Shown one piece after another: positions 3,001 to 26,600 of a stretch of DNA of 64,000 nucleotides. The first letter of the stretch is position 1, and the number at the start of each line of letters is the position of its first letter. Both the position numbers and the translations under genes were made by a program. The DNA is from Haliotis rubra (Eukaryota), in contig NW_025764955.1 of NCBI RefSeq assembly GCF_003918875.1, positions 124,001-188,000 on the forward strand. Reading direction: 5' to 3'. The notes beneath the pieces were generated by a model. The model saw only the letters and a list, made by a program, of their open reading frames with translations, had not been told where the DNA came from and searched no databases.

Positions 3001-6000
3001 CTTATCTGCTACTTGTGAAAGTCGATAAGAAATTCGACAGCTTAAAATCATATCTCCCACTTTAGACAGTTGAAGGGTTTTCCATTTGTTGTAGAGACTT
3101 TGTATGAACGTTTCACACCGTGCAAACATGACCTAACTAAACAGTTATGAATATACATTAACACGTGTATACTTCGCTCAGTATGGGTAGTATTTGTGAT
3201 GGTGGGTCCGAACCTTTTGTAGGTTTCTCAATATCATACCCCTGCCTATATTGGGGAAACAACAAAACTGCAAAGTAACGTTTAATCCAACTCGGACATC
3301 CGCTTACACACGCTCGCACGTATTCATGATGTCGGCAATCCTATAACATTCCCTCTGGCTATAAAACATATAACGTATTCCACTTTCTCCTATTGGTATT
3401 GATGTAAATCAAGAAGCTGCTGGACATATTAAAGATTTAATCAGACAAAAGCGGACGTTACTTGTGCTTCAAATGTTCCGGATTGTCTCAAAGGGTATGT
3501 ACATTGAATTTTGTTAATTTGCTACTTTAGACTTGGCGTATCAAACACCAAAAACACTGTCATAGTCCGAAGTCAAACACTGCTCCAATGTGCACTTAAA
3601 TAATTTTTGATGGATAGTCCTATATGGTGCTGATGTAGGCGATACTGTTTCTACTTGTACAATACGAAACATCAATACGATTCCAGTGTAGGGCAATGGG
3701 CAGGTACCCTTTTCGTGAACACCTCTTTACAGTGTTATCACAGATTTTCAAACATCCATCCACATCATTTTCACCGTTCATATTTTGCCGTCTTTTACGA
3801 TAAATTGTTTCTGTTTGGCAGATAAACGAAACTGGTTAATTTTTTGACTGCCACCATATGCAAATTTAGTTAATTCAAGATAATATAGTAACCATGATTG
3901 TCTCTGGTCGTATTCCTCTACATTTTACGAAAGCGGTTCAGTCACAAAAGAGCCGAGCCTCCACTGCAGGCATTATCAAGGCTCAAAAGCTAGGAGTAGC
4001 TGCGCTGTCACCACTTCAATGTTATCAGGGAGACCCTCCTAAATTGTTGTCATCCGTTTTACTATCTCCAAGTATTCCCCGGTAGGCGTCATGATTATAT
4101 TAATTTATCATTTTGTCTGTTGTGTCATTTCCTTCAAAAAGGTGATATCTGACGCGAAGGAGTTTTATATCTCCAAAAATGCTTATTTTAGTACGAAACA
4201 TCTGTAATCGTATCGGATATTCTCTTTCTTAGAGCTCCTGAGAGGGTACGTAAGTCCCAAAACGTCAAAGTCAATTTAGCTCTACCAAACTTTTAATCGT
4301 AGAATATTTGTTATTTTTAATAATGGCTAAAACTCAGCACAATCGCCAGCGGCAGAAGGGATGGTGTAAATCCAGATAGGGTCCATGCAGGTAGCAAAAG
4401 TACTGAAAGTCCCCATGGATCTTCAGTTGTTGGTAATCTGTAGCCCGTTTTTATTTTGTACTGTCTATAGTGATTTAATTTTACAATAACGTACCAGTTT
4501 TAAATTTACATTTGTGATACTTTAATATTTTTACTGTCCTTCGATGACAGGTTTTTACGTTCTAAATTTATTGATTTTAATATTGATATAAATTGAATTG
4601 TTCTCGTCACGATATGGCTGTAGTATTGCCGATGTAACGCTAAATATTAACTCACTCACTCACACAATCTTTCTTAGAGGGGCGAAAAAGGTCCAATACA
4701 TACACTTCACGGTTAATTACTGGGAGTTTTAATCGAATCCTTTTCAGACTATTTGACATTAATTGTCAGTGTTGCTGCTTTGTAACATTTGGTGCGACTA
4801 ATGCCACAACCCATTATCGCGCACATGTGCATGTAGCCCTGTGTTCATTTTGTTTTACAAACTGTTAAAGGAATGAGAAATGGTTCAATAGACACACTGA
4901 CATTTACACCTGTTCTTTAAATTGTCAGTAACATGAAAAAACCTCGGTTTTCTTTCGTTTTTGTCATTTACTCAAATGATTACGCTTTCATGATGGAAAA
5001 AAAATCACTCCATTGGATAATGACTAAAATATCCCAGTACAAAATGATTGGGGTGAGTGAGTGAGTTTAGTTTTACGCCGCACTCAGCAATATTCCAGCT
5101 ATATGGCGGCGGTCTGTAAATAATCGAGTCTGGACCAGACAATCCAGTGATCAACAGCATGAGCATCGATCTGCGCAATTGGGAACCGATGACATGTGTC
5201 AACCACGTCAGCGAAACTGACCACCCGATCCCGTTAGTCGCCTCTTACGACAAGATAGTCGCCTTTTTTATGGCAAGCACATGGGTTGCTGAAGACCTAT
5301 TCTACCCCGGATCTTCACGGGTCACAAAATGATTGGGTGTCACTACGGTTTCATTGTTTGATGATGAACAGACAGAGACGTGCAGTCATGGGCACGATGT
5401 GTCTGGGGTGTTTGACAACCTGTGCTTGGATATTTCCTGATAGAATCGTTGCACACAGTTCTCCTGTTTTCAGCAAAACGTCACCACGTCTTCACAGTCA
5501 CTGCACACAGAAATGATTTAGTTCCTTGAGAGCCATTATAGAAGTTGAAATATGAAGGAAAACCAAGTTCTATGGATAGTCAACTTCTTAATTGCATTGA
5601 GTGCCATGTTTCGGCGTAGGTACTACCACTTGATTGATAACGGTGTTGGTACCTACGCCGAAACGTCGCACTCACTGCAATAAAGAAGGGCTTCACACGT
5701 CGTACCCATGAGGGGAACTTGACTATCCATAGAACTTGGTAATCCGTCACACGGAAATGACTTTAACGTGAAATTTACTCAAACAGTACGTCATCGTCGA
5801 CGTGAGACCGGTCTCCCGTCACGGATCCATGTATTCACATCTCATCCACCCGATATCACAACCAGACACTATCTGGGCTGAAAATCTGGTTTACGGTATA
5901 GGCAAGGATTGGCCTCCATTGCTATTCACTGATCGAGAAATTGTTTAGACCTCACAGATCGTCGTGCCCGAATGAGGAGGACGATTTCAGGAATACAATG

Positions 6001-6358: not shown

Positions 6359-8395
6359 TGTGTTTGCATGTTGATCACAAACGCGCTACTGAGAGCTGAT
6401 TTATAGGGTAAACAGGACCTTTGGGCGGTTAGTTTAGATATTCTAATTTTAATTGCCGATCTGACTAATCATTGGTCACATTTATGGTGGCATTGCGTGG
6501 CACAATTTGTCTCACAGATAAAGGAACATCCGGCCAGCGTCAGCCTCTAGATTCATCACAGATTTGGCGGGTATGGTGAAATCACTTTGAACGAACACCA
6601 CTACATATTGTGAAAGGAGTGACTGACTGGGTATGGTTTTAAGCCGCTTTTAGCAATATTCTAGCAACATCAGAGCGGGGGACACCAGAAATGGGCTTCA
6701 CACGTCGTACCCATGAGGGGAATCGGCCTTGAGCGTCAGGCTACCTCACAGCCCCTTTTGTGAAAGGAAGTGTTACTGGACAGTCGTACCGGACAACACA
6801 CACTGATACCCTCAAATCACCACGGAAGAGTGTATTTACGACTTCGTCATTCGAAGTACTGGTATCCCTACCACGTTTGTGGTAGAGTATGTGTTGTTTT
6901 AATATAATTTTCTTAACAATCGCAAACAGCTGAAGGGACGGTGCAAGTACTCCTGGGTACTATGCAGGGAAAGGTGTTATATAATGGGAGATCATAACAT
7001 GGTAATTGTCGAAATTATATGATCAAGTCAAATGTTGCATTCCTGATTTGAGGGGGAAGTATTCATTATACCACAGGTATGCGAGATCCCGACAGTTTGG
7101 CCTAATTTAGGGTGTACGTGATATTTCAGTTTTCCTTCTAAAGATTTAGATTAAGAGAAACAGAGATGTAATGAACCTGTACCACTGAACCAGAAGCCAA
7201 TCTGGATCTTTAAGAAATCTTCATTTGCTGAACATTTAACTTCATCAAATTTAATTTCTGAACATCATGTATAAAACTCATCAAATCACTCACCCAGCAG
7301 GGACAACATGTATGGAAATACGATATTCAGTAGGAAAGTAGATGCTGGAGATCTTAGCATAGATCCCATCTCCACCAGATCCCTGTGACGCATTGCACCT
7401 CCATGTTGTGCTCCCCAGGATGAGCTGACCCACTCTCCAGTCCCTGCCCACATCCTTCTGAGTGGTCACCAACAGGATCCTGTCATCCACACACACGAGG
7501 CGCTGGAAAACATGCGTCCTCTCGTGATCGTTCTTGTTACTAATTATTGAAAATGAATATGAGTAGATGTCGAGTTTCTACTAATATTTTCAAAATCAAA
7601 TCAAAATCCACAAAATGAATCATAAATATGAAAGCCTTGTAGGGTGGCTATTAAAATTAGTTTCCAACTAACAGCATATTGTCGGGGATATACACTAATA
7701 AGCAGAAAAAAGAAATTGTACCAATATCAGGCCTGAAAGAAAGATATTCCTAACGTATAAGTAAATCACTATGCAATATGGAATTGAAATGTCAGTATCG
7801 CCTGTGTACCCACTGGCCCCAAGACACGCCAGCCCACGCCAGATTTGGCCACTTGGTACTCGGTACATATGTACATATGATCATATTTTTAATCTACTTT
7901 ATCAGAAATTAGAACCAGAACGTCTCCACAAAAATCAATTTGTGCTAAAGAATCCATAATGCTATCTGTCATCTGTGAAATGTTACAGACGAGTATATGA
8001 ATATGTTCTGAATTTTATCGCTTTGAATAGCATTTTATCAATTTCGACCATCGGATCCTGGCACGAATGCGGGACGCAACTTTAAATGTGCAACGGACTG
8101 TGGCGTCTTAGTTTTGGCAGGACCACCGGTATCTCTGCATGGAGTATCAGATCGGTTCAATGAAACTATATATGTACACACAAATTCATTGCAACCGTTC
8201 ATACCCACATACCTTTAGTCCATCAACACCATCAAGATCAACAACATCACTGAGGACACCAGAACTGTGAAGCTTGAACCGTTCTCCGTTGTCGTCAGTT
8301 GTGAAGTCCACGTTGTGGTGGAAGGAGTTGTCGGTAGAATGACTGTCGTGTGGGAACAGCCCCGATACAACAAAGAAGAAAACCAGACGCAACAT
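1..8395 (-). CDS. Uncharacterised secreted protein, multi-exon, 3' part beyond left edge of window
   Basis: Phase-compatible GT-AG exons on -: 8395-8213 (MLRLVFFFVVSGLFPH..., signal-peptide-like), 7502-7294 (RLVCVDDRILLV...), 2255-1908 (PYDMIQEANIHF...TKRRHRR...CMDCHG), 896-839 (FELLIKK...), 51-<1 (LEGESQLRAD...). 849 nt / 283 aa with no stop. Confidence 0.8.
223..666 (-). mobile_element. SINE-like retroelement family B with (ACTC)n tail
   Basis: 14-bp TSD gcaacaatcttaag (209-222 / 667-680); homologous to 4235-4667 and 45131-45386. Confidence 0.75.
1815..1900. repeat. Short minisatellite (atatgcaatatatcaaca-like units)
   Basis: About 4 degenerate ~20-bp units next to the exon donor at 1907. 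Confidence 0.6.
4235..4667 (+). mobile_element. SINE-like family B copy
   Basis: TSD tctttcttagag (4223-4234 / 4668-4679); ends aactcactcactcac; inverted homolog of 223-666. Confidence 0.75.
5053..5323 (-). mobile_element. SINE-like family A copy
   Basis: 14-bp TSD acaaaatgattggg (5039-5052 / 5324-5337); (ACTC)n tail; homologs at about 9385, 10378, 18035 and 52990. Confidence 0.8.
5562..5740. repeat. Imperfect palindrome, probably a Penelope-like pseudo-LTR remnant
   Basis: Arms of about 60 bp, accaagttctatggatagtcaa...ggcgtaggtac and its reverse complement; contains gccgaaacgtcg...aataaa, typical of PLE pLTRs. Confidence 0.55.
6328..6362. repeat. (GT)n microsatellite
   Basis: Visible directly. 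Confidence 0.95.
6619..6757 (-). mobile_element. tRNA-related SINE family C, internally deleted
   Basis: TSD ttgtgaaagga; homologous to 20704-20860 and 27866-28020. Confidence 0.65.
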
Positions 8396-8661: not shown

Positions 8662-11600
8662 ATGAAGAGCGCTGGCTGGGTAGGAGCCACCCTCCTGCTA
8701 CTGTGCTCATACAGTCAGGGGTATTTCTTCCAAGACGACTACGACCATCAGTATACCTACTCTTCTATGTCGGAACTGTTCGGCCATAAAAATATCACCA
8801 CTGTTCTGAAGGTAAGTTGTAATTATTAACCTGTAATGTGAACATGCATTTTCAAAGTTTCAATATTTATTGGAAACCTTCAGCTCCTGACATGCAAACT
8901 TAGTGGGCGACACGCTTTTCCCACAGCCTTGTACACCACTTAACTATATATAGGACTCAAGCTTGAACAGTTCAGTAATTTCATATATTGTAAAATATAC
9001 CAATTTCATCACAGATATGCCGTTTACTTCTATTGAAATCTGTTTCGGAGATAATCGAAACTTATTCTATGGCGCTGACTTGTAAATTATCCCAAAAAAA
9101 TTGTAAGCCAAACTAGAATACTTTGACGGAATAAATAAACGCATGGGTGTTTTTGAATACCTTCAGTTCAAGATCAGAGCCCTCAATACGACAGGGGATG
9201 GCGGGAGACTGCATTCGTTACGTGTGATCAGTATTGTGCAGTTTGCAGATGGCAGATGTGAGTATTTTTTCACGTTTATTGTTGTCCAACAACATCTTGA
9301 TACATATATACAAAACAAAAAACGAAACTTCACATGTGTCACTTTATGTCCCAAACATACCCTTATAGTTTTAGTTTTAGTGAGGGAGTGAGTTTAGTTT
9401 TACGCCGCACTCAGCAATATTCCGGCTATAAGGCGGAACCCCTATAGTGTGTTGCTAGTGGATAAATCCGGGTTATCGATGATTAGGCATTAAGCTGCGT
9501 CAGGTGCACCCTTTAAAGTCAACGGTAGGATGATAGGTTCACCTTTTTATTTCATCTGTATTGATGTTTGTTCTGTACCGCGTATGCCCCCTCTCGTGTT
9601 CACAACAGCAAGACAACGTTGTCTCATTGAACACCCATGAACACAGCATTAGGCAGCCTGTGCCATTGCTGTACCAACATGGCGCCCAGCACTTCAACAT
9701 TCTGGGGTTGATGTCTCAAGGCACGAAAACTTTTCACAGAGCATCCCATGCTTGTCCGATTGGATTGTGGTCAGTTGGTCTTGATGACCACTCCATGACG
9801 TCAATACCCGCATTTTGCAGGATATGTGTCAAAACAGCTGTGTGTGGTGTGGCATTGTCATGTTGGAATTGAGGTCAGGACCATGACCAGCCGAGAAACA
9901 GGTCCAGGTCAAGGAAATGGTCACGATATCCCGCTGCATTGACGTTCCCACCAATTACGAGAAGACGTGAGGGCACGATCCCGCAGAAAGCTCCCCAAAC
10001 TATTACGCTGTCGCTACGAAATTGACCAGCTTCATGTAGCTGCACTGGAGTTGACGTTCAGCGTTCCGACGCCACGCTCCGTCGGCAAATCGCGGCGTAA
10101 ACCGTATAAACAACCCGATTTCATTCTCCTGGTCCCAGTGCATGTGCAATTGTGCCCAGCGTAGACATTCTTTACGGTTTACCTCGGTCAGAATCGGCCA
10201 AACAGTTTCGAGTCCCCTAAATGGTGCGATACTGGTTCACCTTGCGGTCATCAACTGACGTAGCCGGCATGTGGCGTTACACGCCCCCGTCCTGATCATG
10301 ACCTGGGGCGATCTGTCTTCTGCATCTCAGGGCACGCGTAACAGCCACAGTACTCTAGCCAGTACACTGGCAGTTAGGAGTGAGTGAGTCTAGTTTTACG
10401 CCGCTCTCAGCAATTTTCCAGCTGTATGGCGGCGGTCTGTAAATTATCGAGTCTGGACCAGACAATATAGTGAGCAGTCAGCAGCGTGAGCATTGATCGA
10501 CGCAATTGGGATACGATGACATGTGTCGGCCAAGTCAGCTTGTCTGACCACCCGATCCCGTTAGTCACCTCTTACGACAGGCATGGGTAACTGAAGATCA
10601 ACTCTAACCTGGATCTTCACTGGTTGGTAGCAAGGAACATGAAACTGTGGTCACGTGAACCCGCACACGTGCAGGGTCGCGATTTCACAAAAGAGCGTGC
10701 TGCATGCACCCCGCGTGGTTTACCACAGTTGAAATGGATGGATGCGTCAGGTCAGACCTAGCTTTATGGTATTTGCCCACATTAACTACCTTGTAGACCC
10801 CTGAAGATCCAGGTCAGACCTAGCTTTATGGTATTTGCCCACATTAACTACCATGTAGACCCCTGAAGATCCAGGTCAGACCTAGCTTTGTGGTATTTGC
10901 CCACATTAACTACCATGTAGACCCCTGAAGATCCAGGTCAGACCTAGCTTTATGGTATTTGCCCACATTAACTACCATGTAGACCCCTGAAGATCCAGGT
11001 CAGACCTAGCTTTATGGTGTTTGTCCACATTAGCTACCTTGTAGACCCCTGAAGATCCAGGTCAGACCTAGCTTCATGGTATTTGCCCACATTAACTATC
11101 TTGTAGACCCATAAAGATGCAGGTCAGACCTAGCTTTATGGTATTTGCCCACATTAACTACCATGTAGACCCCTAAAGATCCAGGTCAGACCTAGCTTTG
11201 TGGTATTTGCCAACATTAACTACCTTGTAAACCCCGGAAGATCAAGGTCAGACCTAGCTTTATGGTATTTGCCAACATTAACTACCATGTAGACCCCTGA
11301 AGATCAAGGTCAGACCTAGGTTTGAGGTATTTGCCCACATTAACTACCATGTAGACCCCTGAAGATCCAGGTCAGACCTAGCTTCATGGTATTTGCCCAC
11401 ATTAACTACCTTGTAGACCCCTGAAGATCGAGGTCAGACCTAGCTTTGTTGTATTTGCCCACATTCACTACCTTGTAGACACCTGAAGATCCAGGTCAGA
11501 CCTAGCTTTATGGTATTTGACCACATTAACTACCTTGTAGACACCTGAGGATCCAGGTCAGACCTAGCTTTATGGTATTTGCCCACATTAACTACCTTGT

Positions 11601-14600
11601 ACACCCCTGAAGATCCAGGTCAGACCTAGCTTTGTTGTATTTGACCACATTAACTACCTTGTAGACCCCTGAAGATCCAGGTCAGACGTAGCTTCATGGT
11701 ATTTGCCCATATTAACTACCTTGTAGACCCTTGAAGATCCAGGTCAGACCTAGCTTTGTTGTATTTGACCACATTAACTACCTGTAGACCCCTGAAGATC
11801 CAGGTCAGACCTAGCTTTGAGGTATTTGACCTCATTAACTACCTTGTAGACCCCTGAAGATCCAGGTAAGACCTAGCTTTATGGTATTTGCCCACATTAA
11901 CTACCTTGTAGACCCCTGAAGATCGAGGTCAGGCCTAGCTTTATGGTATTTGCCCACATTAACTACCTTGTAACCCCTGAAGATCGAGGTCATACCTAGC
12001 TTCGTGGTATTTGCCCACATTAACTACCTTTTAGACCCCTGAAGATCCAGGTCAGACCTTGCTTTATGGCATTTGAACACATTAACTACCTTGTAGACCC
12101 CTGAAGATCCAGGTCAGACGTAGCTTTGTGGTTTTTCTCTCACATTAACTACCTTGTAGACACCTGAAGATCCAGGTCAGACCTAGCTTTGTGGTATTTG
12201 ACCACATTAACTACCTTGTAGACCCCTGAAGATGCAGGTCAGACCTAGCTTTGTGGTATTTGCCCACATTAACTACCTTGTAGACCTCTGAAGATTGAGG
12301 TCAGACCTAGCTTCATGGTATTTGCCAACATTAATTACCTTGTAGATCCCTGAAGATCAAGGTCAGACCTAGTTTCATGGTATTTGACCACATTAACTAC
12401 CTTGTGGACACCTGAAGATCAAGGTCAGACCTAGCTTCATGGTATTTGCCCACATTAACTACCTTGTAGACCCCTGAAGATCAAGGTGAGACCTAGCTTT
12501 GTTGTATTTGCCCACATTAACTACCTTGTAAACCCCTGAAGATCAAGGTCAGACCTAGCTTTATGGTATTTGCCAACATTAACTACCATGTAGACCCCTG
12601 AAGATCAAGGTCAGACCTAGGTTTGAGGTATTTGCCCACATTAACTACCATGTAGACCCCTGAAGATCCAGGTCAGACCTAGCTTCATGGTATTTGCCCA
12701 CATTAACTACCTTGTAGACCCCTGAAGATCGAGGTCAGACCTAGCTTTGTTGTATTTGCCCACATTCACTACCTTATAGACACCTGAAGATCCAGGTCAG
12801 ACCTAGCTTTATGGTATTTGACCACATTAACTACCTTGTAGACACCTGAGGATCCAGGTCAGACCTAGCTTTATGGTATTTGCCCACATTAACTACCTTG
12901 TACACCCCTGAAGATCCAGGTCAGACCTAGCTTTGTTGTATTTGACCACATTAACTACCTTGTAGACCCCTGAAGATCCAGGTCAGACGTAGCTTCATGG
13001 TATTTGCCCACATTAACTACCTTGTAGACCCTTGAAGATCCAGGTCAGACCTAGCTTTGTTGTATTTGACCACATTAACTACCTTGTAGACCCCTGAAGA
13101 TCCAGGTCAGACCTAGCTTTGAGGTATTTGACCACATTAAACCTACAGACCTGTAGATCAAGGTCCCTGAAGATCCAGGTCAGACCCCTAGCTTTTATGG
13201 TATTTGCCCACATTAACTACCTTGTAGACCCCTGAAGATCGAGGTCAGACCCTAGCTTTTATGGTATTTGCCCACATTAACTACCTTGTAGACCCCTGAA
13301 GATCGAGGTCAGACCTAGCTTTGTGGTATTTGCCCACATTAACTACCTTGTAGACCCTGAAGATCCTGAAGATCCAGGTCAGACCTAGCTTTATGGTATT
13401 TGCCCACATTAACTACCTTGTAGACCCCTGAAGATCCAGGTCAGACCTAGCTTTGGTATGGTATTTGCCCACATTAACTACCTTGCAGAGACCCTGAAGA
13501 TCCAGGTCAGACCTAGCTTTGTTGTATTTGCCCACATTAACTACCTTGTAGACCCTGAAGATCCAGGTCAGACCTAGCTTCATGGTATTTGCACCACATT
13601 AACTACCTTGCTTGTAGCCCACATTAACCCTGAAGATCCAGGTCAGACCTAGCTTTGTGAAGATCGAGGTCATAGACCTAGCTTCCATGTGGTATTTGAC
13701 CACATTAACTACCTTGTAGACTTGAAGATCCAGGTCAGACCCCTTCATGGTAGCCCACATTCCAGGTCAGAGGTCAGACCTAGCTTTGTGGTATTTGCCC
13801 ACATTAACTACCTTGTAGACCCCTGAAGATCCAGGTCAGACCTAGCTTTGAGGGTATTTGCCCACATTAACTACCTTGTAGACCCCTGAAGATCCAGGTC
13901 AGACCTAGCTTTTGAGGTATTTGCCCACATTAACTACCTTGTAGACCCCTGAAGATCCAGGTCAGACCTAGCTTTGTGGTATTTGATCCAGGTCATTAAC
14001 TACCTTGTAGACCCCTGAAGATCAAGGTCAGACCTAGCTTTATGGTATTTGACCACATTAACTACCTTGTAGACCCTGAAGATCCAGGTCAGACCTAGCT
14101 TCACGGTATTTGCCCACATTAACTACCTTGTAGACCCCTGAAGATCCAGGTCAGACCTAGCTTTATGGTATTTGCCCACATTAACTACCTTGTAGACCCC
14201 TGAAGATCCAGGTCAGACCTAGCTTTATGGTATTTGCCCACATTAACTACCTTGTAGACCCCTGAAGATCGAGGTCAGACCTAGCTTCGTGGTATTTGCC
14301 CACATTAACTACCTTGTAGACCCCTGAAGATCCAGGTCAGACCTAGCTTTATGGCATTTGCCCATATTAACTACCTTGTAGACCCCTGAAGATCCAGGTC
14401 AGACCTAGCTTTATGGTATTTGCCCACATTAACTACCTTGCAGACCCCTGAAGATCAAGGTCAGACCTAGCTTTGTTGTATTTGACCACATTAACTACAT
14501 TGTAGACCCTCAAGATCCAGGTCAGACCTAGCTTCATGGTATTTGCCCACATTAACTACCTTGCAGAGCCCTGAAGATTGAGGTCAGACCTAGCTTTGTT

Positions 14601-17600
14601 GTATTTGACCACATAAATTAACTTGTATACCCCTGAAGAGCCAGGTCAGGCCTAGCTTCATGGTATTTGCCCACATAAACTACCTTGTAGACCCTTGAAG
14701 ATCCAGGTCAGACCTAGCTTTGTTGTATTTGACCACATTAACTACCATGTAGACCCCTGAAGATCCAGGTCAGACCTAGCTTTGAGGTATTTGCCCACAT
14801 TAACTACCTTGTAGACCCCTGAAGATCCAGGTCAGACCTAGCTTTATGGTATTTGCCCACATTAACTACCTTGTAGACCCTTGAAGATCGAGGTCAGTTC
14901 TAGCTTTATGGTGTTTGCCCACATTAACTACCTTGTAACCCCTAAAGATCGAGGTCAGACCTAGCTTCGTGGTATTTGCCCACATTAACTACCTTGTAGA
15001 CCCCGGAAGATCAAGGTCAGACCTAGCTTTGAGGTATTTGCCCACATTAACTACCTTGTAGACCTCTGAAGATCGAGATCAGACCTAGCTTTATGGTATT
15101 TGCCAACATTAACTACCTTGTAGACCCCTGAAAATCCAGGTCAAGCCTAGTTTCATGGTATTTGACCTCATTAATTACCTTGTAGACCCCTGAAGATTGA
15201 CGTCAGACCTAGCTTTATGGTATTTGCCCACATTAACTACCTTGTAGACCCCTGAAGATCCAGGTCAGACCTAGCTTTGTGGTATTTGCCCACATTAACT
15301 ACCTTGTAGACCCCTGAAGATCCAGGTCAGGCCTAGTTTCGTGGTATTTGACCACATAAACTACCTTGCAGACCCCTGAGGATCCAGGTCAGACCTAGCT
15401 TTGTTGTATTTGACCACATTAACTACATTGTAGACCGTGAAGATCCAGGTCAGACCTAGCTTTATGGTATTTGCCCACATTAACTACCTTGTACACCCCT
15501 GAAGATCCAGGTCAGACCTAGCATCATGGTATTTGCCCACATTAACTACCTTGTAGACCCCTGAAGATCCAGGTCAGACCTTGCTTTGTTGTATTTGCCC
15601 ACATTAACTACCATGTAGACCCCTGAAGGTCCAGGTCAGACCTAGCTTCATGGTATTTGACCACATTAAGTACCTTGTAGACTCCTGAAGATCCAGGTCA
15701 GACCTAGCTTCATGGTATTTGCCCACATTAACTACCTTGTAGACCCCTGAAGATCAAGGTCAGACCTAGCTTTGAGGTATTTGCCCACATTACCTACCCT
15801 GTAGACCCCTGAAGATCCAGGTCAGACCTAGCTTTGAGGTATTTGCCCACATTAACTACCATGTAGACCCCTGAAGATCCAGGTCAGACCTAGCTTTGTG
15901 GTATTTGCCCACATTAACTACCTTGTAGACCCCTGAAGATCAAGGTCAGACCTAGCTTTGTGGTATTTGACCACATTAAGTACCTTGTAGACCCCTGAAG
16001 ATCCAGGTCAGACCTAGCTTCACGGTATTTGCCCACATTAACTACCTTGTAGACCCCTGAAGATCCAGGTCAGACCTAGCTTTATGGTATTTCCCACATT
16101 AACTATCTTGTAGACCCCTGAAGATCCAGGTCAGACCTACCTTCGTGGTATTTGACCACATTAACTACCTTGTAGACCCCTGAAGATCCAGGTCAGACCT
16201 TGCTTTGTTGTATTTGCCCACATTAACTACCTTGTAGACCCCTGAAGATCCAGGTCAGACCTAGCTTTGAGGTATTTGCCCACATTAACTACCTTGTAGA
16301 CCCCTGAAGATCCAGGTCAGACATAGCTTTGTGGTATTTGCCAACATTAACTACCTTGTAGACCCCTGAAGATCAAGGTCAGACCTAGCTTTATGGTATT
16401 TGACCACATTAAGTACCTTGTAGACCCCTGAAGATCCAGGTCAGACCTAGCTTCATGGTATTTGCCCACATTAACTACCTTGTAGACCCCTGAAGATCCA
16501 GGTCAGACCTAGCTTTATGGTATTTGCCCACATTAACTACCTTGTAGACCCCTGAAGATCCAGGTCAGACCTAGCTTTATGGTATTTGACCACATTAACT
16601 ACCTTGTAGACCCCTGAAGATCCAGGTCAGACCTAGCTTTGTGGTATTTGACCACATTAACTACCTTGTAGACTCCTGAAGATCCAGGTCAGACCTAGCT
16701 TCATGGTATTTGCCCACATTAACTACCTTGTAGACCCCTGAAGATCCAGGTCAGACCTAGCTTTGAGGTATTTGCCCACATTACCTACCCTGTAGACCCC
16801 TGAAGATCGAGGTCAGACCTAGCTTTGTGGTATTGGACCACATTAACTACCTTGTAGACCCCTGAAGATCGACGTCAGACCTAGTTTTGAGGTATTTGCC
16901 CACATTAACTACCTTGTAGACCCCTGAAGATCCAGGTCAGACCTAGCTTTGAGGTATTTGCCCACATTAACTACCATGTAGACCCCTGAAGATCCAGGTC
17001 AGACCTAGCTTTGTGGTATTTGCCCATATTAACTACCTTGTAGACCCCTGAAGATCAAGGTCAGACCTAGCTTTGTGGTATTTGACCACATTAAGTACCT
17101 TGTAGACCCCTGAAGATCCAGGTCAGACCTAGCTTCATGGTATTTGCCCACATTAACTACCTTGTAGACCCCTGAAGATCCAGGTCAGACCTAGCTTTAT
17201 GGTATTTCCCACATTAACTATCTTGTAGACCCCTGAAGATCCAGGTCAGACCTACCTTCGTGGTATTTGACCACATTAACTACCTTGTAGACCCCTGAAG
17301 ATCCAGGTCAGACCTTGCTTTGTTGTATTTGCCCACATTAACTACCTTGTAGACCCCTGAAGATCCAGGTCAGACCTAGCTTTGAGGTATTTGCCCACAT
17401 TAACTACCTTGTAGACCCCTGAAGATCCAGGTCAGACCTAGCTTTGTGGTATTTGCCAACATTAACTACCTTGTAGACCCCTGAAGATCAAGGTCAGACC
17501 TAGCTTTATGGTATTTGACCACATTAAGTACCTTGTAGACCCCTGAAGATCCAGGTCAGACCTAGCTTCATGGTATTTGCCCACATTAACTACCTTGTAG

Positions 17601-20600
17601 ACCCCTGAAGATCCAGGTCAGACCTAGCTTTATGGTATTTGCCCACATTAACTATCTTGTAGACCCCTGAAGATCCAGGTCAGACCTTGCTTTGTTGTAT
17701 TTGCCCACATTAACTACCTTGTAGACCCTTGAAGGTCCAGGTCAGACATAGCTTTGTTGTATTTGACTACATTAACTACCTTGTACAACCCCTGAAGATC
17801 CAGGTCAGACTTAGCTTCATGGTATTTGACCACATTAACTACCTTGTAGACCCCTGAAGATCCAGGTCAGACCTTGCTTTGTTGTATTTGCCCACATTAA
17901 CTACCTTGTAGACCCTTGAAGATCCAGGTCAGACATAGCTTTGTTGTATTTGACTACATTAACTACCTTGTAGACCCCTGAAGATCCAGGTCAGACTTAG
18001 CTTCATGGTATTTGACCACATTAACTACCTTGTAGACCCCTGGAGATCCAGGTCAGAAGTGGTCTCCAGCAACTCATGTTTGTCGTAAGAGGCGACTGAC
18101 GGTATCGGATGGACAGGCTTGCTGTCTTGTTTGACACATGTCATCGTATCCAAATTTTGTAAATTGATGCTCATGATGTAAATCACTGGATTGTCTAGTC
18201 CAGACTCCATTACTTACAGACCACCGTGATATAGTCGTGATATTGCTGAGAGCGGCGTTAAACAACAAAACAATAACTACCTTGTACTAACCATTTTCAA
18301 TTTAATTCATTTCTCCAAATGTGAAGTTTCTCTCTTTGTTCAGTATACAATCCTCAGATAAACCCTTTCATAATAAATGTTCAGATAATAATGATCGTAA
18401 AAGCCGAGTGAAATGAGACTCATTTGGTCGCAATGTGTCACCTACCTGATAGTGAATACACATTTTCGAAAACACACTTTCAAAACAAATATGTTTTCCT
18501 ATTTTGCAGACTTCAGTAACCCCAAAGGTTGGAATTTGAAAACAATGTGAGTATCTTTACAACCTGTTACGGACATGTAGTTATGGTTTTGTGTTCCACT
18601 GGCGGTGGTCAACGTAGCAATCACGTGATACCATCACAGAGTTCTTCCTGGTGCTTTTGTCATGAAATGGTTATGTTTACATAAAAAAAACTATAGAAGT
18701 GAATGACCCTAAGCACTGAACTGAGTGAGTTGATGATAAATAGCAGGTAATATAAGCGGGCACTATTTTCATATCACCGAACGGATCGTTTAGATTAACG
18801 TAAATCCTTCTGAATGGCACTAATCGATATACGATCGATATAATGTTTCTTTACATCAGTTTGGAATAGACAAATGTTTGTTTTGACTGAAATGGTGATG
18901 GGGGTGGAGGAGTGTGTGAGGTGGGCATATGTGTCAGTGCGGATGTCCGTTCTCCCAACTCCCAAACCGTTGATTATCTCTAAATGATACACGTCATATA
19001 GGTACGCTTAGTAATAAACAGGCGCCTTTGGATGATTTGAGATTTGTTGAACGTGAACATGCATTTGGCATGCTCCAGGCTGGCCAGTCTACTGTGGCTG
19101 TTGTACGTTCCATGAGATGTAGTAGACGGACAATTCAAAACCTGAGGACACGTGTGCATCGAACGAGTACGACATCTGATCGCCCCAGGTCAGAACGGCC
19201 ACGTGTGACATCACATGCATGTAGATGACAATCAAATTCTGTTTCGTTATTTGCGTGATCGTTTCATGACCGCCAGGAATTGGCTGTTTAGGGGTCGTTT
19301 AACTGCCCAGACCACACGAAACCGCATGCGCGCTGTTTATATACGTGTCCGACGTCCTTATATTTGGCTGATGACATAAGTAACATCTACGCTGGGCACA
19401 ACTGCACCTGCGGTGGCACCAAAGAGAACAGAATAGGGTTGCGTTTAGAGGCGAATCTCGTTTTACACTGCGATTTGCCGACGGAAGTGTGCTAGTGAGG
19501 CGTCGGTGCGGTGAACGTCACGTCACGCCCAGTGCTGCGAACAGGAAGTTGACCGATTACGTGGTGGTATCGTAATGGTATGGAGAGCTTTCTGCGGGAA
19601 CGTGCCCTCACGTCTTCTCGTAATTGGTGGGAACGTCAATGCAGCGGGATATCGTGACCATTTCCTTGACCTGGAGCTGGTTCGTGGCTGCTCATGGTCC
19701 AGACCTCCAATTCCAACATGACAAGGCCACACCACACACAGCTGTTTTGACACATATCCTGCGCGGGTATTGACGTCATGGAATGGCCATCGAGATCACC
19801 TGACCGCAACCCCATCCAACACGTAAGGGGTGTTCTTGAAGGAAACATCTTCATGCCTTGAGACGTCAGCCCAAGAATGCTGTTGAGCATGAGTCTGTTC
19901 ATTTGTTTTATTTTTTTTCTTGTGTTGATGTTTTAGGATCTTGTATGTGTTATGGGTCATCAAACAATTGTATTTCGTCCACTTGTGTATAGCACCTGTC
20001 TCTTTATACACCCGCATCATGGTGATCGTACCATCGTGTTTGATCCTGCTCCTTGTCACTGGGTGACATTTGCTGGAGACTTCTTCTGATTCTTTAGACG
20101 TCTTTACAGGTTTTTATTACTCTCCTTGCAGATTCCTGTTTCGGACTAGTACTAAAGGATCTATTGACCTGGTCCGTGTCCATCCTGAAGACGAGGACGA
20201 GCTGGTGGTCATCAAGAAAGCTGTCACCAGTCTTTTCTCTGTTACTGTCAGGGTATACATTGTGATACTATATGTAAAACTTCAATGTCAGAGAAAAAGC
20301 ATCCACGATTTTCTGCCCAAACTGATGCCATTTGGTGTGAAAGGCCAAATTGACATGAAAATCACATAAATGCTATGAAAACATATATAATATTATAAAC
20401 TCTTGCCTGAGCTTAGCTACAAAATTGTACATTGTACAAAATCAAATTCTTAGATTTAACATGTTGACACACTGGCTACTTTGCTGGGCATACTTTATGC
20501 TCCATGTTTTTTCTCAATAATAAAAGTATGAGTTTGTTCTGATATACGTTTGCGGTGATTAATGTTAACTTAATCCCATCGTGAAGCGGCGTAGTTCTAC

Positions 20601-23600
20601 ATACATTATATACATTTTGTGTCATTGTTGTCAAGGAATCAGGAGAAAGGACGGACTCCTATGAGACAACAGATCTAGATCACCTAGGTGAGTTATCCCT
20701 TGTAGTGAGTGGGTCAGTATGGTTTTACGCTGCTTTTAGCATTATTCCAGCAACACCACGGCGGGGGACACCAGAAATGGGCTTCACATATGTGTGTAAT
20801 TGAACTCTCGTCATCGACGTGACGAGCGAACGCTTTAACCACTAGGCTACCCCACCGCCGCTACTCCATGTAGAAAACAGCCGCGTGATGAACTGCATCG
20901 CTAGTTGAGGACGGTATCATAGAGCAGGAGTCAAACGGTACAAGTATGACGTGCATACGTTCAGTACAGATACAGGGACGCTTGGGCGTAATAGCTAAAG
21001 CTGAAGAACCTGGTAGTTAAAGCTGAAGACCATAATGGTCCATAAGGGTGCAGTGTGTCAAACCTTTTCCCGGTATCCCTCGCTGTGTAAAATCGGCGTA
21101 AAATCATGCTCTCTGGCACAGCTGACATGCATTTTACATGGCTTAATTGAAAACTAAAAGGTAGTTCAATTATAACACATGCTTTGGTTTACTATTCCAG
21201 GAAATCTAACGCACAAGTACAACGTGGTTACGACGCCGTCCGGAAGAACACTGACTCGTTCCCACTTCAGTCATGAGAGGGCAGAGAGAACTCACCACAA
21301 GGTAAGACCACTCTGTGATTCACACTATTGTCAACAAGAAAACAACCTTGTCACTTTCCCCGCCCGCGGGGCACATTAGAATTGTGACTGTCCATATAGT
21401 AATGAATAATATGAAAGTATACATATATGTAAACTATTAACACACATATAAAGCTTTAAGAACAGATAGACACTACGATCCCTTTATGCCATCAGATGAA
21501 ACAAGTACATAGGAAATAGATACAGGCAAAAGGCCTTGAGGAAATATTAATTTATAGCGCCGACTTTTCAAGGCAGTCTTGAATAACGTTCTTGAATATG
21601 TGTCCTCTTTAAAAACTATGCACTCAGACAAAAAGACAAATAAATGGGCCATAAGACTAATTTCAGAAAAGACAGGTAGCAAGGGAAGTAACTCCGGGCA
21701 ATATTAAGAGCTGATAATTACCTGTTTCATATGCATGCAACTTCATGTAACTTCAAAGGCTTCATGCGGTTTGCATCATCATGAAAAACATGCAGCAAGG
21801 GCCATTTAATTCTGTATAAACTAATTTAAGACACCATTTTTTCAAACGCGTTTGCAGTGGGCTAAAAAGCATAGAGCAAGGGGCATGACTCTGTAAAACA
21901 TCAATTTAAGACACATACTTTCAAACTCATATTAGAGCATGACCAGTTACATCAAAGTCTCCAACTTAAATAGCTTTTGAGAAATTTGTTTGGAATTATG
22001 ACCCCTTTGAGAAGCAACGAAGGACGGAAGAATACGTTCCAATATCCCCCGGCACCCTTTGTTGGTGATGTTTGTTGGGTGGTGGCGGTTTGGTTGAAAA
22101 ATATATCGTCAATTCACTTCAGACTGAATCTGTATTTTGTGCCATACGAAACGACCTGGAAACTGGTATGTGAAGAAAAATATAGTCACGCGATTGGCCC
22201 TTTGCCTTAGTCAAATAACAATTTTTTAACTAGCCTTACTTAATGGTGATGTGCATATTACCTTGTCATCCGATACAAAGATATGAAACGTAATTGATAA
22301 GTATCCTATCATGAAACCAATGACTCGATCTCGTTCGGCGAGAGGAAGCACGCCCCCAATACAATCATGTGACAACGAGAACACGTCACTTTATCACCTA
22401 CACTTTGGACGTGAATCGTGGGAAACTAACTAATTTTGCTTATTTTACTGTATCTTTGGTTTTTGCTATGGTATGGTTTTCCTATTGTGTCATCCAACTA
22501 TTATCTAACAATTCTACAAACAGTTGGCTGTTTTCTCTTGCTGTACAGTTTTGGTTGGTTGTTTTTCTCGCCTCGTGTCATTATTCACTTTCGGTACTGC
22601 CTTGGTTAGTCTGGACTTTGTGTTTGTGTCTGACCATTTCTGGTGCCCTTTTCTCTCCTTTCTCCACCATTGCATGACGCTCGGTGCTGCACTCCCAGAC
22701 GCTCGCCTCAACACTGCAATAGGCATACAGCACCAATATACAATTCTGAATGTGAAGGTGTTACTATAGACACTGATTTACACAGGACTTTGAAGCCTCG
22801 GCCTCTCAGTTCTCGCCTCGGCCACGGAGGCCATGTCACAGGATCTAACTGTGGACAATACTTCACTCTTGGATCACCTAGCCACCATGTTCCTCTGGCA
22901 TGTGCCAATTCCGACGTGGTAGGTCACATCCGTTTAGTGCTTGCCACCACCACTGTGATTCGGAGGACTGGGCTGCTTACTCCTTACTGGCAGGAGGAAT
23001 TGATGAAGAGACTTTGTTTGTAGACAAGATCGGAGCATAACGCAAACGTGCTCAGGTCTTTTCATCACTTCGCCAACCTGTCATCAACGACTTCCAGAAC
23101 CTTCAACCTCTACCAGTCAAGGAGGAATGTGGTCCGTGGAGCCCCGAAACCCTGCGACAGATAACGTTTCAATGACTTTTAACGTCGTCCCGTTTGGAAG
23201 CCTAAATACAAATGACGCTGATATGCAGGACATTCCCGCCCCAGTCGTCCATATCCACGATATATCCGTAGGCGGGAGACACAGGGTCTTCTGGTCCATC
23301 TGGACATTCCTGGAAGACCCTTTTGTAACCAATATCCTCAAGACGGGCTACCAGTTGCCAATAGCCAAGTCACCGCCTCTGACCAACCTGCCCTGGTCAC
23401 AAGAGTGCTATAGAGAAACTGTTAGAGCCCAGACACTCCCCAGGGTTCTGCTCTCCATCTTCTTTGTCCCCAAGAAGAACTCAGACAAGATGCGGATGAT
23501 ACAGAACTAGGCGGTTTTCAACAAGCTGTATCTTTGGGTGACGCCACATTTCCACAATTCCAAGCTGTCCCCACAGGATTGGCTGGTCACTTACCCATCG

Positions 23601-26600
23601 ACGAACCTCACCGGAGGTTCATCTGGTTCACTTTCGACGACCAACATTACCAATAGAAAGTCCTTACATTTCTACGGCCCCGTGGCTTTTCACTCGGATC
23701 ACAGCACCAATCAGTTGGGTTTTTGTAAAGTATTTTTATTCACTTTACTTGGTTACATTTGAACAAGATATGTGGGTAGAGTAGAATGGTACAGGTTGCA
23801 TAATAAAAAGCAGACAGTGTATAACATATGGTACTGGGAATATAGATTAACAATTGAGATGCTAGCTAATATTACAGAGAATTAAAAGACTAAAACATAA
23901 ACCATAGGACTGCATCTAGGACATTTTCTGTAAAAATGTTTCATATTATCGTTTTTCTTCTCGATAAATTTCTCTATCTCGTAGACATCTTTTAATAATG
24001 TTCTGTAGATGGTGAAGCTAGGTTTGTGTCCTTTTATATTCATTACGAAAATATGGCGCTTTGCCAATAGTATCATGTGGTTGAGTAAGTGGTTACTACT
24101 GCAACAAAATAGAATATCATGGTTTGACATTTCATACGTTTTACCAAGGACTTGAGTTATAAAATTTTTAAATTCTGACCAGAACATTTTGATGGTTGGA
24201 CAATCAAGGTATACATGGTAAATATCCTCACTTACTGAACCACATAATGTACATAGGTCATTATCTATCAATTTCATTTTTAGTAATTCTCGTTTAGTGT
24301 AAATGACTCTATGCAAAAACTTATATTGAAAATCTAAGAGTTTCGTGTCTTTAGTGCATTGTCTATATTGTGAAAATATGGTTTTCCAATTTAACAACTC
24401 ATTTAGTTCCCCGTTCCATTTGAGACACACATTCGGAATGTTATAATCAGATATAAAATTATCATAGAATATCCTTGAACCTTTACTAGGTTTAATCAAA
24501 TCGTTCCAAGGAGAACACATAGATAACGACGGTATATTCAAATTGTTATTTGTTCGTATAACGTCTTTCCACTGTTTGGGTATACTAAGGAGAACACGAT
24601 TAAAGTCAAGTACAGTACCTTTAATACCAACTTTTGCCTTAAGTTCTGCGAATGTTAGAAATGCGTGGTCGTTACAAATATCTTTAACATAAACTATTCC
24701 ACATTTAATCCAGTTATGAATGATCAAACTTGGCTGGTTACACTGGTGATTTAACCATAGTGGCTGCATGAGTATTTCATTAATGTCGTTATTGTTACAT
24801 ACCGATCTTTTAACATATCTATGCCAAGCATCAAGGGAATCTTTCCAAAATGGATTTTTAATATTATAATGTTTAGGGATGTTGGCTCCTAAGAAAAGAA
24901 GGTTTTGTAGAGGGAAACCGGCGAGAGCATAGTTCTTAGGTTTTGAAATATATCTCTTCAAACATGAACGTTTTAAAGAGTCGATAAAGGTTTTCACGTC
25001 GACCATTCTTAGACCACCTTCTTCGTACCTTCGTACTAAATTAATTCGTTTTATTTTATCAATTTTATCATTCCATATAAATTTGAAGAATAATCTGTTC
25101 AAATCAGTAATAAATGTTTTTGGGGGATTAGGGAGAGAAGAGAAGATGTGGACAATCGTGGATAAAGCTAAACTTTTAACGACGGTTATTTTCCCTATCA
25201 ACGTTAAATTGCGTCTTTTCCAATTCAGTAGAATTCTTTTTATATTTTCGAGTCTCTTCTTTGTATTAATTACCGATAAGTTTTCTAAATGAGCATTTAA
25301 TCTGATTCCCAATACTTCGAAATTCGAAAGTCCTGGGATAGGACTATTTTACTACCTGCCATTGAGCCTAGCCATACTACTTTTGTTTTATCAATATTTA
25401 TTTTCAAACCTGACATCTTGTAAAAGGAAAGCAAAGCTTTCATAGCTTCATTAAGAGAGGATTCGGAACCGTCCAAAAATAATTCAGTGTCATCTGCATA
25501 TTGACCAATAACATGTTCGATGTCGTTGAAAACAATTCCTTTTATTCTGTGGTTGTCTCTGATCATTATTCCTAGTATTTCTGCTACCAATAAGAATAAA
25601 TATGGAGATATGGGATCACCCTGTCTGCATCCCCTTTCATTATCGAAAAACGTGGACAAGTGACCATTCTGTATCATACACGAGGATGCATTAGAAATCA
25701 ATATGTTAACCCATCTTTGAATGTTACTTCCAAAACCAAACTTGTCTAGGACCATCTTAATGAATAATTTTGACATGGTGTCGAAAGCTTTTTCAAAGTC
25801 AATTAAGATTAGTAAACCTTTTATGTTTTGCCTTTTAGTTTCAAACATAATGTCATAAAGAAGTCTAATGTTTTCCGTAATGTATCTTCCTGGAATGAAT
25901 CCTGTTTGATTTTCGTTTATAAGAAAATTCAAATTTTTTTTAATCCTGTTTGTTATACAAGTACTTATAACTTTATACAATGCGTTTAGGAGAGAGATAG
26001 GTCGCCAATTCTTTAGGTATCTTCTATCCTTACATGGCTTAGGGATACATGTAATTACTCCTCTATTCATTGTCGTAGTCATAGGATTCTGGTTGAAACT
26101 TACTTTAATATATCGGTGAATCCAAATTTTCAGATATTTCCTGAACATTTTTAAGAATTCGATAGGGAAGCCATCTAAACCTGGACTTTTGTTATTTTTC
26201 ATTGATTTAACAGCATGCGAAAGTTCTTCAACACTAATATCGCGCTCTTGTTCATTTGACTGTTCCTTATTTAAAGAAGGAGTAGCAATATGTTCGAATA
26301 CAGCTTTAATGTCTTCATCTATGTCGCAATTTGATTTATACAGGTTTTCATAGAATCGCTTTTGTTCCACTATTATTTCTCGTCCATCTGCTATTTCTTC
26401 ACCATTATCACGAATAAGGGAGTTAATAAGTTTGTTTGTATAGTTTCTATTTTCTAAATGGCAAAAATAATTTGTAGGTTTATCCCCTTCTTCATACCAC
26501 TGGATTCTATTTCTAACTTGGATTCCTTTTATTTCTTCTTCTTTTATTTTTTCCAATTCATTTTTACTTTTAGATAAATCAACAAGAAGTGTTTCATTGA

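What the first reader, a model, noticed from the sequence alone, without database searches (positions are those of the whole stretch)
10748..18286. Birth of a satellite from a SINE insertion junction
Seen: the 62-bp monomer equals 39 bp of left flank ending in the SINE's TSD (taactaccttgta, repeated at 18274-18286) plus the first 23 bp of the SINE (gacccctgaagatccaggtcaga). The array starts and ends on the 9-mer caggtcaga, and the last unit reads straight into the SINE body. Inference: microhomology between flank and SINE head seeded a duplication that amplified about 118-fold inside an intron. This is an unusually clear record of locus-specific satellite origin.
Basis: partly seen in the sequence, partly recalled or inferred. 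Interest (0 to 1): 0.75.

Follow-up and report, generated by a model that had tools for sequence, protein, structure and literature searches.

The report
Minisatellite born at a SINE junction
A 7.3-kb tandem array in an abalone gene intron arose where a SINE landed inside an old DNA transposon: each 62-base unit joins the end of one to the start of the other. It is a very clear example of a known way that tandem repeats are born, not a new kind of element.

Summary
Window 10748-18057 is a 62-bp x 118 tandem array. It abuts a roughly 239-bp SINE (18035-18273) bounded by a perfect 13-bp target-site duplication.

New here: the "left flank" is the terminal region of a decayed Tc1/mariner-like DNA transposon (9307-18347, 32-bp inverted ends). 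At least 15 other genomic copies of that transposon are uninterrupted "empty sites". They show three things:
- The 48 bp (9+39) of each unit is ancestral transposon sequence.
- The SINE inserted there.
- The 9-mer at the array start was already in the transposon (consensus CAGGTTAGA), while the SINE family head carries CGGGTTAGA.

So a 7-9 bp direct repeat 62 bp apart existed before amplification, as the Haber-Louis model of minisatellite birth requires.

The junction created by the duplication occurs 114 times in the 1.38-Gb assembly. All listed matches lie here or at one collinear second copy (contig C110, about 12-14 degenerate units, same boundaries).

The array later grew by block duplications of at least 9 and at least 12 units (99.5% identical).

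Short-read contig depth hints at amplification in one organism label but not in a second.

This is a new member of a known kind, better called a single-locus minisatellite than a satellite.

The parts
9307..18347 (-). Host element: decayed DNA transposon, probably Tc1/mariner-like. Two SINE copies, a roughly 60-bp piece carrying the SINE-tail module, and the array are inserted in it.
   Evidence: 32-bp terminal inverted repeats at 9307-9338 and 18316-18347: 26/32 matches, score 40 against shuffles 16.6+/-3.3. At least 170 first-look candidates for its end region and 240 for its interior in the genome. Only weak protein signals: HTH_29 25.6 bits on the neighbouring inverted copy and DDE_3 14.5 bits on a paralogue.
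10378..10620 (-). Second, independent SINE copy of another subfamily, with an (ACTC)n-type tail, inside the same transposon. Not part of the array.
   Evidence: Alignment with the family: its tail-proximal sequence and tail type differ from the downstream copy. 76% identity to the downstream copy.
10621..10747 (.). Transposon-derived sequence directly left of the array.
   Evidence: Aligns to about 20 paralogous transposon copies.
10748..10756 (+). Left 9-mer CAGGTCAGA, of transposon origin: the left partner of the microhomology.
   Evidence: The transposon family consensus reads CAGGTTAGA at this position.
10748..18057 (+). 62-bp tandem array of about 118 units. Each unit is 48 bp of transposon (9-mer + 39 bp ending in the TSD) plus 14 bp of SINE head. 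The shared 9-mer counts with either side.
   Evidence: TRF. Unit segmentation: 94 units of exactly 62 nt, mean pairwise identity 92.1%.
11244..11800 (+). 9-unit block duplicated at 12545-13101 (lag 21 units).
   Evidence: 99.5% identity against 90.9% mean (92.8% maximum) for control blocks.
15818..16560 (+). 12-unit block duplicated at 16933-17675 (lag 18 units).
   Evidence: 99.5% identity.
13100..13900 (+). Degenerate zone of truncated or indel-bearing units. It may be real decay or long-read consensus error.
   Evidence: The assembly that matches this genome's size is Nanopore-based (PMC6774278).
18022..18034 (+). Left copy of the 13-bp target-site duplication TAACTACCTTGTA, as it sits in the last unit. 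The same 13 bp end the transposon part of most units.
18035..18273 (+). SINE-like retroposon. Its first 23 bp (18035-18057) are the SINE part of the last unit.
   Evidence: More than 4000 first-look candidates, top 40 at 82-87% identity. Precise end at 18034-18036 and variable (CCAA)n/(ACTC)n tail at the other end. Truncation pattern.
18049..18057 (+). Right 9-mer CAGGTCAGA inside the SINE head: the right partner of the microhomology and the end of the array.
   Evidence: The SINE family consensus reads CGGGTTAGA here. C110 reads CGGGTCAGA.
18274..18286 (+). Right copy of the target-site duplication.
   Evidence: In C110 only CCTTGTA remains.
18287..18347 (.). Remaining transposon end, including the right inverted repeat.
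8662..8829 (+). ORF with a signal-peptide-like start, taken as exon 1 of the host gene. The array would then lie in its first intron (inferred).
   Evidence: ORF list. Earlier unchecked scan notes on this window.

Best explanation
This is a single-locus minisatellite created at the junction of two nested mobile elements.

Step 1 (shown). A Tc1/mariner-like DNA transposon copy sat in what is probably the first intron of a large secreted-protein gene.

Step 2 (shown). A roughly 239-bp SINE inserted 61 bp from the transposon's end and duplicated 13 bp of target.

Step 3 (shown for the parent families, inferred for this copy at the time). The transposon carried CAGGT(T/C)AGA 39 bp upstream of the insertion point. 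The SINE carried C(G/A)GGT(T/C)AGA 14 bp inside its head. That gave a 7-9 bp direct repeat with 62-bp spacing.

Step 4 (inferred). Replication slippage or unequal exchange between these two short repeats duplicated the 62 bp between them. This created the new junction SINE-9-mer -> transposon.

Step 5 (shown as pattern). Once two or more units existed, unequal exchange expanded the array. This includes recent duplications of blocks of at least 9 and at least 12 units, up to about 118 units on this contig. A homologous copy of the locus kept or decayed to about 12-14 units.

No function is implied; the array is most simply a neutral by-product.
For: - Array and unit.
- SINE ends and TSD defined by 28 family copies, each with its own 10-15 bp TSD.
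- Empty sites: left- and right-flank queries hit the same paralogous places, overlapping by 11-13 bp (for example on contigs C2073, C2656, C2383, C2306, C2688, C446). In the alignment of 20 fetched copies, about 15 read uninterrupted across the insertion point, with CAGGTTAGA at the array-start position and no SINE-like 14 bp.
- Transposon inverted ends.
- The duplication junction is confined to this locus and its collinear copy: 114 matches against 0 control; two candidate places for a 3-unit query.
- C110 has the same left and right boundaries, and its resident SINE head still reads CGGGTCAGA.
- Block duplications at 99.5% identity against 91% background.
- Short-read contigs from two samples of one organism label pile up on monomers at tens to hundreds of times the flank depth, so the array is not merely an assembly artefact (with that tool's caveat on depth).
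- The mechanism matches the published models summarised in PMC3389668.
Against: - No orthologous empty or single-unit allele was seen. The evidence for the ancestral state comes from paralogues, not orthologues.
- Both 9-mers in this copy now read CAGGTCAGA, which differs from both family consensuses. Their exact state at the time of the first duplication is unknown, and conversion from the array may have altered the left one.
- The internal 9-mers do not show the simple 5'-SINE/3'-transposon hybrid pattern that one crossover would predict.
- SINE polarity and the SINE label rest on indirect evidence: no tRNA-like head in Rfam or ARAGORN.
- The copy number comes from a Nanopore-based assembly and may be imprecise.
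Confidence: 0.8

Rival explanations
1. The junction origin is right, but the 9-bp repeat played no causal role. The first duplication arose by end-joining or another homology-independent event. The shared 9-mer is then coincidence or the result of later conversion of the boundary by the array.
For: Both boundary 9-mers are identical to each other but differ from both family consensuses. That is what conversion would produce. PMC3389668 reports that flanking direct repeats or an incomplete terminal unit account for only about 6% of human TE-derived tandem repeats.
Against: The transposon consensus already matches the SINE consensus at 8 of 9 positions exactly where the periodicity starts and stops. 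The chance of that at a fixed position is about 1e-4. C110 shows the unconverted SINE state CGGGTCAGA, still 8/9.
Confidence: 0.12
2. The repeat is the internal tandem-repeat module of a composite mobile element (MITE- or Helentron-like, as in bivalves). The two inverted SINE copies and the transposon ends would act as its termini, so the array was carried here rather than born here.
For: The array is flanked by two SINE copies in inverted orientation (10378-10620 and 18035-18273) and lies inside an element with inverted ends. Molluscs are known for such repeat-carrying elements (PMC9659126).
Against: The unit and its junction occur only at this locus and its collinear copy. More than 15 other copies of the host transposon have no repeat and no SINE at this place. 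The two SINE copies belong to different subfamilies, so they are independent insertions.
Confidence: 0.03
3. The array predates the SINE. The SINE inserted into, or next to, an existing repeat, and the 23-bp resemblance is secondary.
For: None specific, beyond the fact that SINEs do insert into repeats.
Against: Every unit contains the 23 bp that match the family-wide SINE head, and the transposon paralogues lack them. The TSD sits exactly at the transposon/SINE join inside each unit.
Confidence: 0.02
4. The array is real, but its length and inner structure (118 units, near-identical blocks, degenerate zone) are partly artefacts of a long-read hybrid assembly.
For: The genome's size and contig count nearly match a Nanopore/Illumina meta-assembly: 1,378,265,264 bp in 2,854 scaffolds in PMC6774278, against 1,378,282,171 bp in 2,855 contigs here. 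Indel-rich zones occur in both arrays.
Against: Independent short-read contig sets of two samples show monomer depth tens to hundreds of times that of the flanks. This fits an array of the order of 100 units.
Confidence: 0.15

Closest known systems
[quoted passage not shown]
   Same: A unit tens of bases long lies between two 5-10 bp direct repeats. The array starts and ends on that repeat, so it holds a whole number of units plus the repeat (118.1 copies).
   Different: The two short repeats belong to two different mobile elements brought together by an insertion. Both parental states can be read from genomic paralogues. The array is large for this class (7.3 kb).
Alu-derived and other TE-derived mini/satellites in human (Jurka & Gentles 2006; Ahmed & Liang 2012, PMC3389668)
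   Same: SINE sequence is recruited into a locally expanded tandem repeat, with short direct repeats at the array ends.
   Different: Only 23 of the 62 bp come from the SINE. The rest is a DNA-transposon end, and the unit straddles the insertion junction, including the target-site duplication.
PcH-Sat of the limpet Patella caerulea, proposed to derive from a Nin-SINE (PMC11121367)
   Same: A gastropod tandem repeat containing SINE-derived sequence.
   Different: PcH-Sat has a 179-bp unit, makes up about 10% of the genome, and is pericentromeric on several chromosomes. The repeat here is a single intronic locus of about 0.0005% of the assembly.
Tandem repeats carried inside MITEs or Helentrons of bivalves, and tandem TE dimers from double insertion (reviewed in PMC9659126)
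   Same: Satellite-like repeats that are physically tied to mobile elements and contain TSD-bearing junctions.
   Different: Those repeats disperse with the element to many loci, or repeat whole elements. This unit is confined to one locus, repeats only a 62-bp junction piece, and is absent from other copies of both parent elements.

Membership tests
Minisatellite born between short direct repeats (Haber-Louis type) | The array is bounded by the same short (5-10 bp) sequence at both ends, i.e. a whole number of units plus that repeat. | tested here: met
   CAGGTCAGA at 10748-10756 and 18049-18057; 118.1 copies.
Minisatellite born between short direct repeats (Haber-Louis type) | Both short repeats existed before the duplication. 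| tested here: met
   Transposon paralogues read CAGGTTAGA. SINE family copies read CGGGTTAGA, and a few read ...GGTCAGA. This is paralogue evidence, not orthologue evidence.
Minisatellite born between short direct repeats (Haber-Louis type) | A single-unit ancestral allele exists at the same locus. | not testable with these tools
   No other abalone assemblies were reachable. The contig laying did not list any junction-spanning pieces.
Classical satellite DNA | Long arrays at many or large (often heterochromatic) loci that form a measurable share of the genome. | tested here: not met
   Only two places in 1.38 Gb, 7.3 kb and 0.76 kb.
SINE | Short non-autonomous element in many dispersed copies, each flanked by its own target-site duplication. 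| tested here: met
   About 235 bp; 4178 first-look candidates; 10-15 bp TSDs visible in many of the 28 aligned copies.
SINE | Simple-repeat or A-rich 3' tail and 5'-truncated copies. | tested here: met
   Variable (CCAA)n/(ACTC)n at one end. In 230 kb not selected for the SINE, partial copies nearly all keep that end.
SINE | Pol III-type head derived from tRNA, 5S or 7SL. | tested here: inconclusive
   No Rfam match, even at E<=10 on this copy or at gathering score on 5 loci holding other copies. ARAGORN found nothing in 8 loci.
Tc1/mariner DNA transposon (host element) | Terminal inverted repeats flanked by TA. | tested here: met
   32-bp inverted ends, 26/32. TA next to both ends, read from the sequence.
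Tc1/mariner DNA transposon (host element) | DDE/D transposase with an N-terminal helix-turn-helix. | tested here: inconclusive
   Only sub-threshold hits on decayed ORFs: HTH_29 25.6 bits (cut-off 28.1) and DDE_3 14.5 bits (cut-off 28.6).
Repeat-carrying MITE/Helentron | The same tandem repeat is found inside many dispersed copies of the element. | tested here: not met

The most novel reading that the evidence does not exclude
The locus may catch a tandem repeat in the act of species- or haplotype-specific take-off. The same junction repeat stands at about 12-14 degenerate units in one homologous copy and about 118 units, with 99.5%-identical multi-unit blocks, in the other. It may be unamplified in a second abalone label. 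Both parent sequences are recoverable from the genome. That would make it a natural, datable series for measuring how a minisatellite passes from first duplication to kilobase array.
Probability: 0.4. Interest if true: 0.5.

Novelty: new member of a known kind. Interest (0 to 1): 0.35.

Why it matters
The origin of longer-unit tandem repeats is rarely observable, because the parental single-copy state is usually lost. Here both parents survive as families: more than 170 first-look candidates for the transposon end and thousands of SINE copies. The ancestral sequence, the insertion, the pre-existing microhomology and the new junction can therefore all be read directly.

This gives a clean teaching and benchmark case for the short-direct-repeat model, and for the idea that nested transposon insertions create substrates for repeat birth. 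The locus is also a likely length-polymorphic marker in an abalone gene intron.

It does not reveal a new mechanism or a function.

Tried and rejected
- I first read the SINE as lying on the minus strand, with its 3' end at the array, because the other end looked like a head. I rejected this after seeing the variable simple-repeat tail and the truncation pattern. Polarity is still indirect.
- I considered a large inverted duplication as the explanation for the two inverted SINE copies and the inverted homology 9695-10165 / 19386-19882. I rejected it. The SINEs belong to different subfamilies, and the homology is a second, separate copy of the same transposon family, which has 240 candidates genome-wide.
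- Rfam and ARAGORN gave nothing for the SINE head.
- Pfam on decayed transposon ORFs gave only sub-threshold hits.
- Laying Logan contigs of four runs on the C110 locus was swamped by SINE paralogues. Junction-spanning pieces were not listed, so the state in the second organism could not be read. One 187-nt contig of organism B reaches 25 nt into the SINE tail from the right flank, which is below the tool's 31-nt bridging rule.
- Whether C65 and C110 are alleles or paralogues could not be settled:
  - They are 87-95% identical over at least 30 kb, against 1.3-1.4% reported heterozygosity (PMC6774278).
  - In the sample S1 run the two types have unequal contig depth (about 310-375 against 120-180).
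  - The second sample shows mosaic states.
- Two word searches of the earlier scan notes (satellite/SINE/tandem terms; haplotig terms) returned nothing on this repeat.
- A self-megablast for long near-identical blocks returned no rows. The blocks were shown by global alignment instead.
Full report
**What is there.** TRF reports a single array at window 10748-18057, period 62, 118.1 copies, 84% matches; periods 124 and 186 score higher at 89%. Direct reading shows three things:
- The array starts on CAGGTCAGA, right after unique sequence.
- The unit is that 9-mer, plus 39 bp ending in TAACTACCTTGTA, plus GACCCCTGAAGATC.
- After the last CAGGTCAGA (18049-18057) the sequence continues into a dispersed repeat.

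The 13-mer recurs once outside the array, at 18274.

**The SINE.** The 261 bp around 18030-18290 has 4178 first-look candidates in the window's own 1.38-Gb genome. The best 40 are 82-87% identical and cover the stretch 18034/36 to 18273.

I aligned 28 copies with their flanks:
- One end is precise, consensus ...GGATCTTCACGGGT(C) as aligned, that is, on the strand opposite to the window copy.
- The other end carries a variable (TTGG)n or (GAGT)n run.
- Many copies have their own 10-15 bp target-site duplications.

For the window copy the duplication is the perfect 13-mer, so the element is 18035-18273.

In 230 kb of sequence not selected for this element, partial copies almost all keep the simple-repeat end. 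I had first assumed the opposite.

No tRNA-like head is detectable. "SINE" is therefore a structural label.

**The flank is a transposon end, and its paralogues are empty sites.** I searched the genome with the left flank plus first unit (10621-10809) and with the right flank (18274-18480). Each search returned more than 160 candidates. In many places the two matches are contiguous and overlap by 11-13 bp, which is the target-site duplication.

I fetched 20 such places and aligned them to the window sequence with the array and SINE removed. About 15 of the 20 copies read straight through. The family consensus runs ...TGCGTCAGGTTAGACCTGGCCATTATGGTATTCGCCCATATTAACTACCTTGTACTACCCATTTTCAATA... and ends at ...TTCAGTATA.

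Three conclusions follow:
- The 9-mer plus 39 bp of each unit is ancestral transposon sequence.
- The 14 bp GACCCCTGAAGATC is foreign to the transposon and matches the SINE head.
- The SINE insertion came first and the repeat second.

The host element has 32-bp inverted ends at 9307-9338 and 18316-18347: 26/32 matches, score 40 against 16.6+/-3.3 for shuffles. TA lies next to both ends. There are weak helix-turn-helix and DDE_3 remnants. I call it a decayed, probably Tc1/mariner-like DNA transposon.

A second SINE copy of another subfamily (10378-10620) and a short piece carrying the SINE-tail module (9377-9436) are also inserted in it.

**Microhomology.** The 9-mer reads as follows in each source:

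| Source | Left boundary (transposon side) | Right boundary (SINE side) |
|---|---|---|
| Family consensus | CAGGTTAGA (transposon) | CGGGTTAGA (SINE) |
| This window | CAGGTCAGA | CAGGTCAGA |
| Second copy, C110 | CAGGTCAGA | CGGGTCAGA |

A few SINE copies carry the C variant. A 7-9 bp direct repeat spaced 62 bp apart therefore existed as soon as the SINE had landed.

Under a homology-independent duplication, the 9 bp left of the duplicated segment would match its last 9 bp at 8 or more positions with probability 28/4^9, about 1e-4.

This is the configuration required by the Haber-Louis model, and close to the Taylor-Breden model, as summarised in PMC3389668. The first duplication itself, by slippage or unequal exchange, is inferred.

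**Locus specificity.** A three-unit query found two candidate places only: this array and contig C110 at 175856-176611.

The junction that only the duplication can create (SINE 9-mer followed by transposon sequence; a 28-mer with up to 3 mismatches) occurs 114 times, against 0 for the reversed control. There are 109 forward and 5 reverse matches. All 100 listed matches are in C65 or C110, and the 5 reverse ones are all in C110.

**The second copy.** C110:156000-185500 is collinear, in inverted orientation, with window 1-45368 at 87-95% identity.
- It has the same transposon, both SINE copies and the same two array boundaries.
- It has only about 12-14 units. Clean units sit at both edges and indel-ridden units in the middle.
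- Its right target-site copy is shortened to CCTTGTA.

The array therefore predates the split of the two copies.

Whether they are alleles or paralogues is unresolved:
- The genome's size and contig count nearly match the haplotig-purged Nanopore/Illumina assembly of Haliotis rubra: 1,378,265,264 bp in 2,854 scaffolds, heterozygosity 1.27-1.44% (PMC6774278).
- The divergence is high for alleles.
- Contigs of a second sample show mosaic states at diagnostic sites, and the depths of the two types are unequal.

**Growth of the array.** Ninety-four units are exactly 62 nt, with mean pairwise identity 92.1% and no decay with distance.

Two multi-unit blocks are duplicated at 99.5% identity, against 90.9% for control blocks:
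- 11244-11800 and 12545-13101, 21 units apart.
- 15818-16560 and 16933-17675, 18 units apart.

This is the signature of recent unequal exchange in register.

A degenerate zone at about 13100-13900 may be old units or consensus error.

**Reads.** Six runs hold part of 17934-20400: three from organism A (two samples) and three from organism B. Only Logan contigs were available.

I laid four runs on the C110 locus. The two clean-unit bins next to the SINE gave these depths relative to the single-copy flank:

| Run | Organism | Depth relative to flank |
|---|---|---|
| X1 | A | about 90-200 times |
| X3 | A | about 35-130 times |
| X4 | B | about 1.4-4 times |
| X5 | B | about 0.5-7 times |

The tool warns that summed contig depth is not a copy number. 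Transposon paralogues may also account for the low signal in B. I take this only as support that the array is real and large in A, and as a hint that it is not amplified in B.

**Context.** An ORF with a signal-peptide-like start lies at 8662-8829 on the plus strand. Earlier notes of this scan place a giant secreted-protein gene from there to beyond 53938 (unchecked). The array would then be in its first intron. I did not test the exon structure.

**Comparison and verdict.** TE-derived mini/satellites, SINE-derived satellites in gastropods (PMC11121367) and TSD-bearing tandem junctions (PMC9659126) are all known. What is unusual here is only the clarity. The unit straddles the junction of two nested elements, and both parents, the target-site duplication and the pre-existing microhomology are all documented by paralogues.

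It is a single-locus minisatellite, not a classical satellite, and a new member of a known kind.

Noticed in passing
L052:4399-4739 (C110:180398-180738) versus window about 5748-5825: An 81-bp unit is tandemly repeated 4.2 times (95% matches) in the C110 copy but is single-copy in the window. This is a second, younger tandem-repeat difference between the two homologous copies.
   Followed up: partly
window 23717-28141: A roughly 4.4-kb LINE (minus-strand ORFs of 476 and 787 aa, at 23882-25312 and 25297-27660) is present in this contig but absent from the collinear C110 copy, whose alignment jumps from window 23717 to 28141.
   Followed up: partly
window 19028-19882: A second, separate copy of the same Tc1/mariner-like family lies in inverted orientation to the host copy (79% identity to 9695-10165). 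It carries the HTH-like ORF at 19028-19228.
   Followed up: partly
window 9377-9436, 20700-20764, 5053-5112, 6618-6702: Pieces of about 45-85 bp match only the tail module of the SINE (...GCGGCGTAAAACTAAA + ACTC repeats). They may be extreme 5' truncations, or the 3' end of a partner LINE or another SINE family sharing that tail.
   Followed up: no
L022:1501-1530 (C110) versus window 18274-18286: In C110 the right target-site copy lacks TAACTA, and the SINE head lacks about 10 bp (AGTGGTCTCC) relative to the window copy. These are small deletions right at the element's edges.
   Followed up: no
window 10378-10620 and 18035-18273: The array is bracketed by two SINE copies in opposite orientation, heads facing each other across the array. 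They come from different subfamilies, so this looks coincidental. An inverted pair could still favour breakage or stalling at the site.
   Followed up: partly
L022:988 (C110): All X1 contig depth reads T where the assembly has C. This may be a residual consensus error in the long-read assembly.
   Followed up: no
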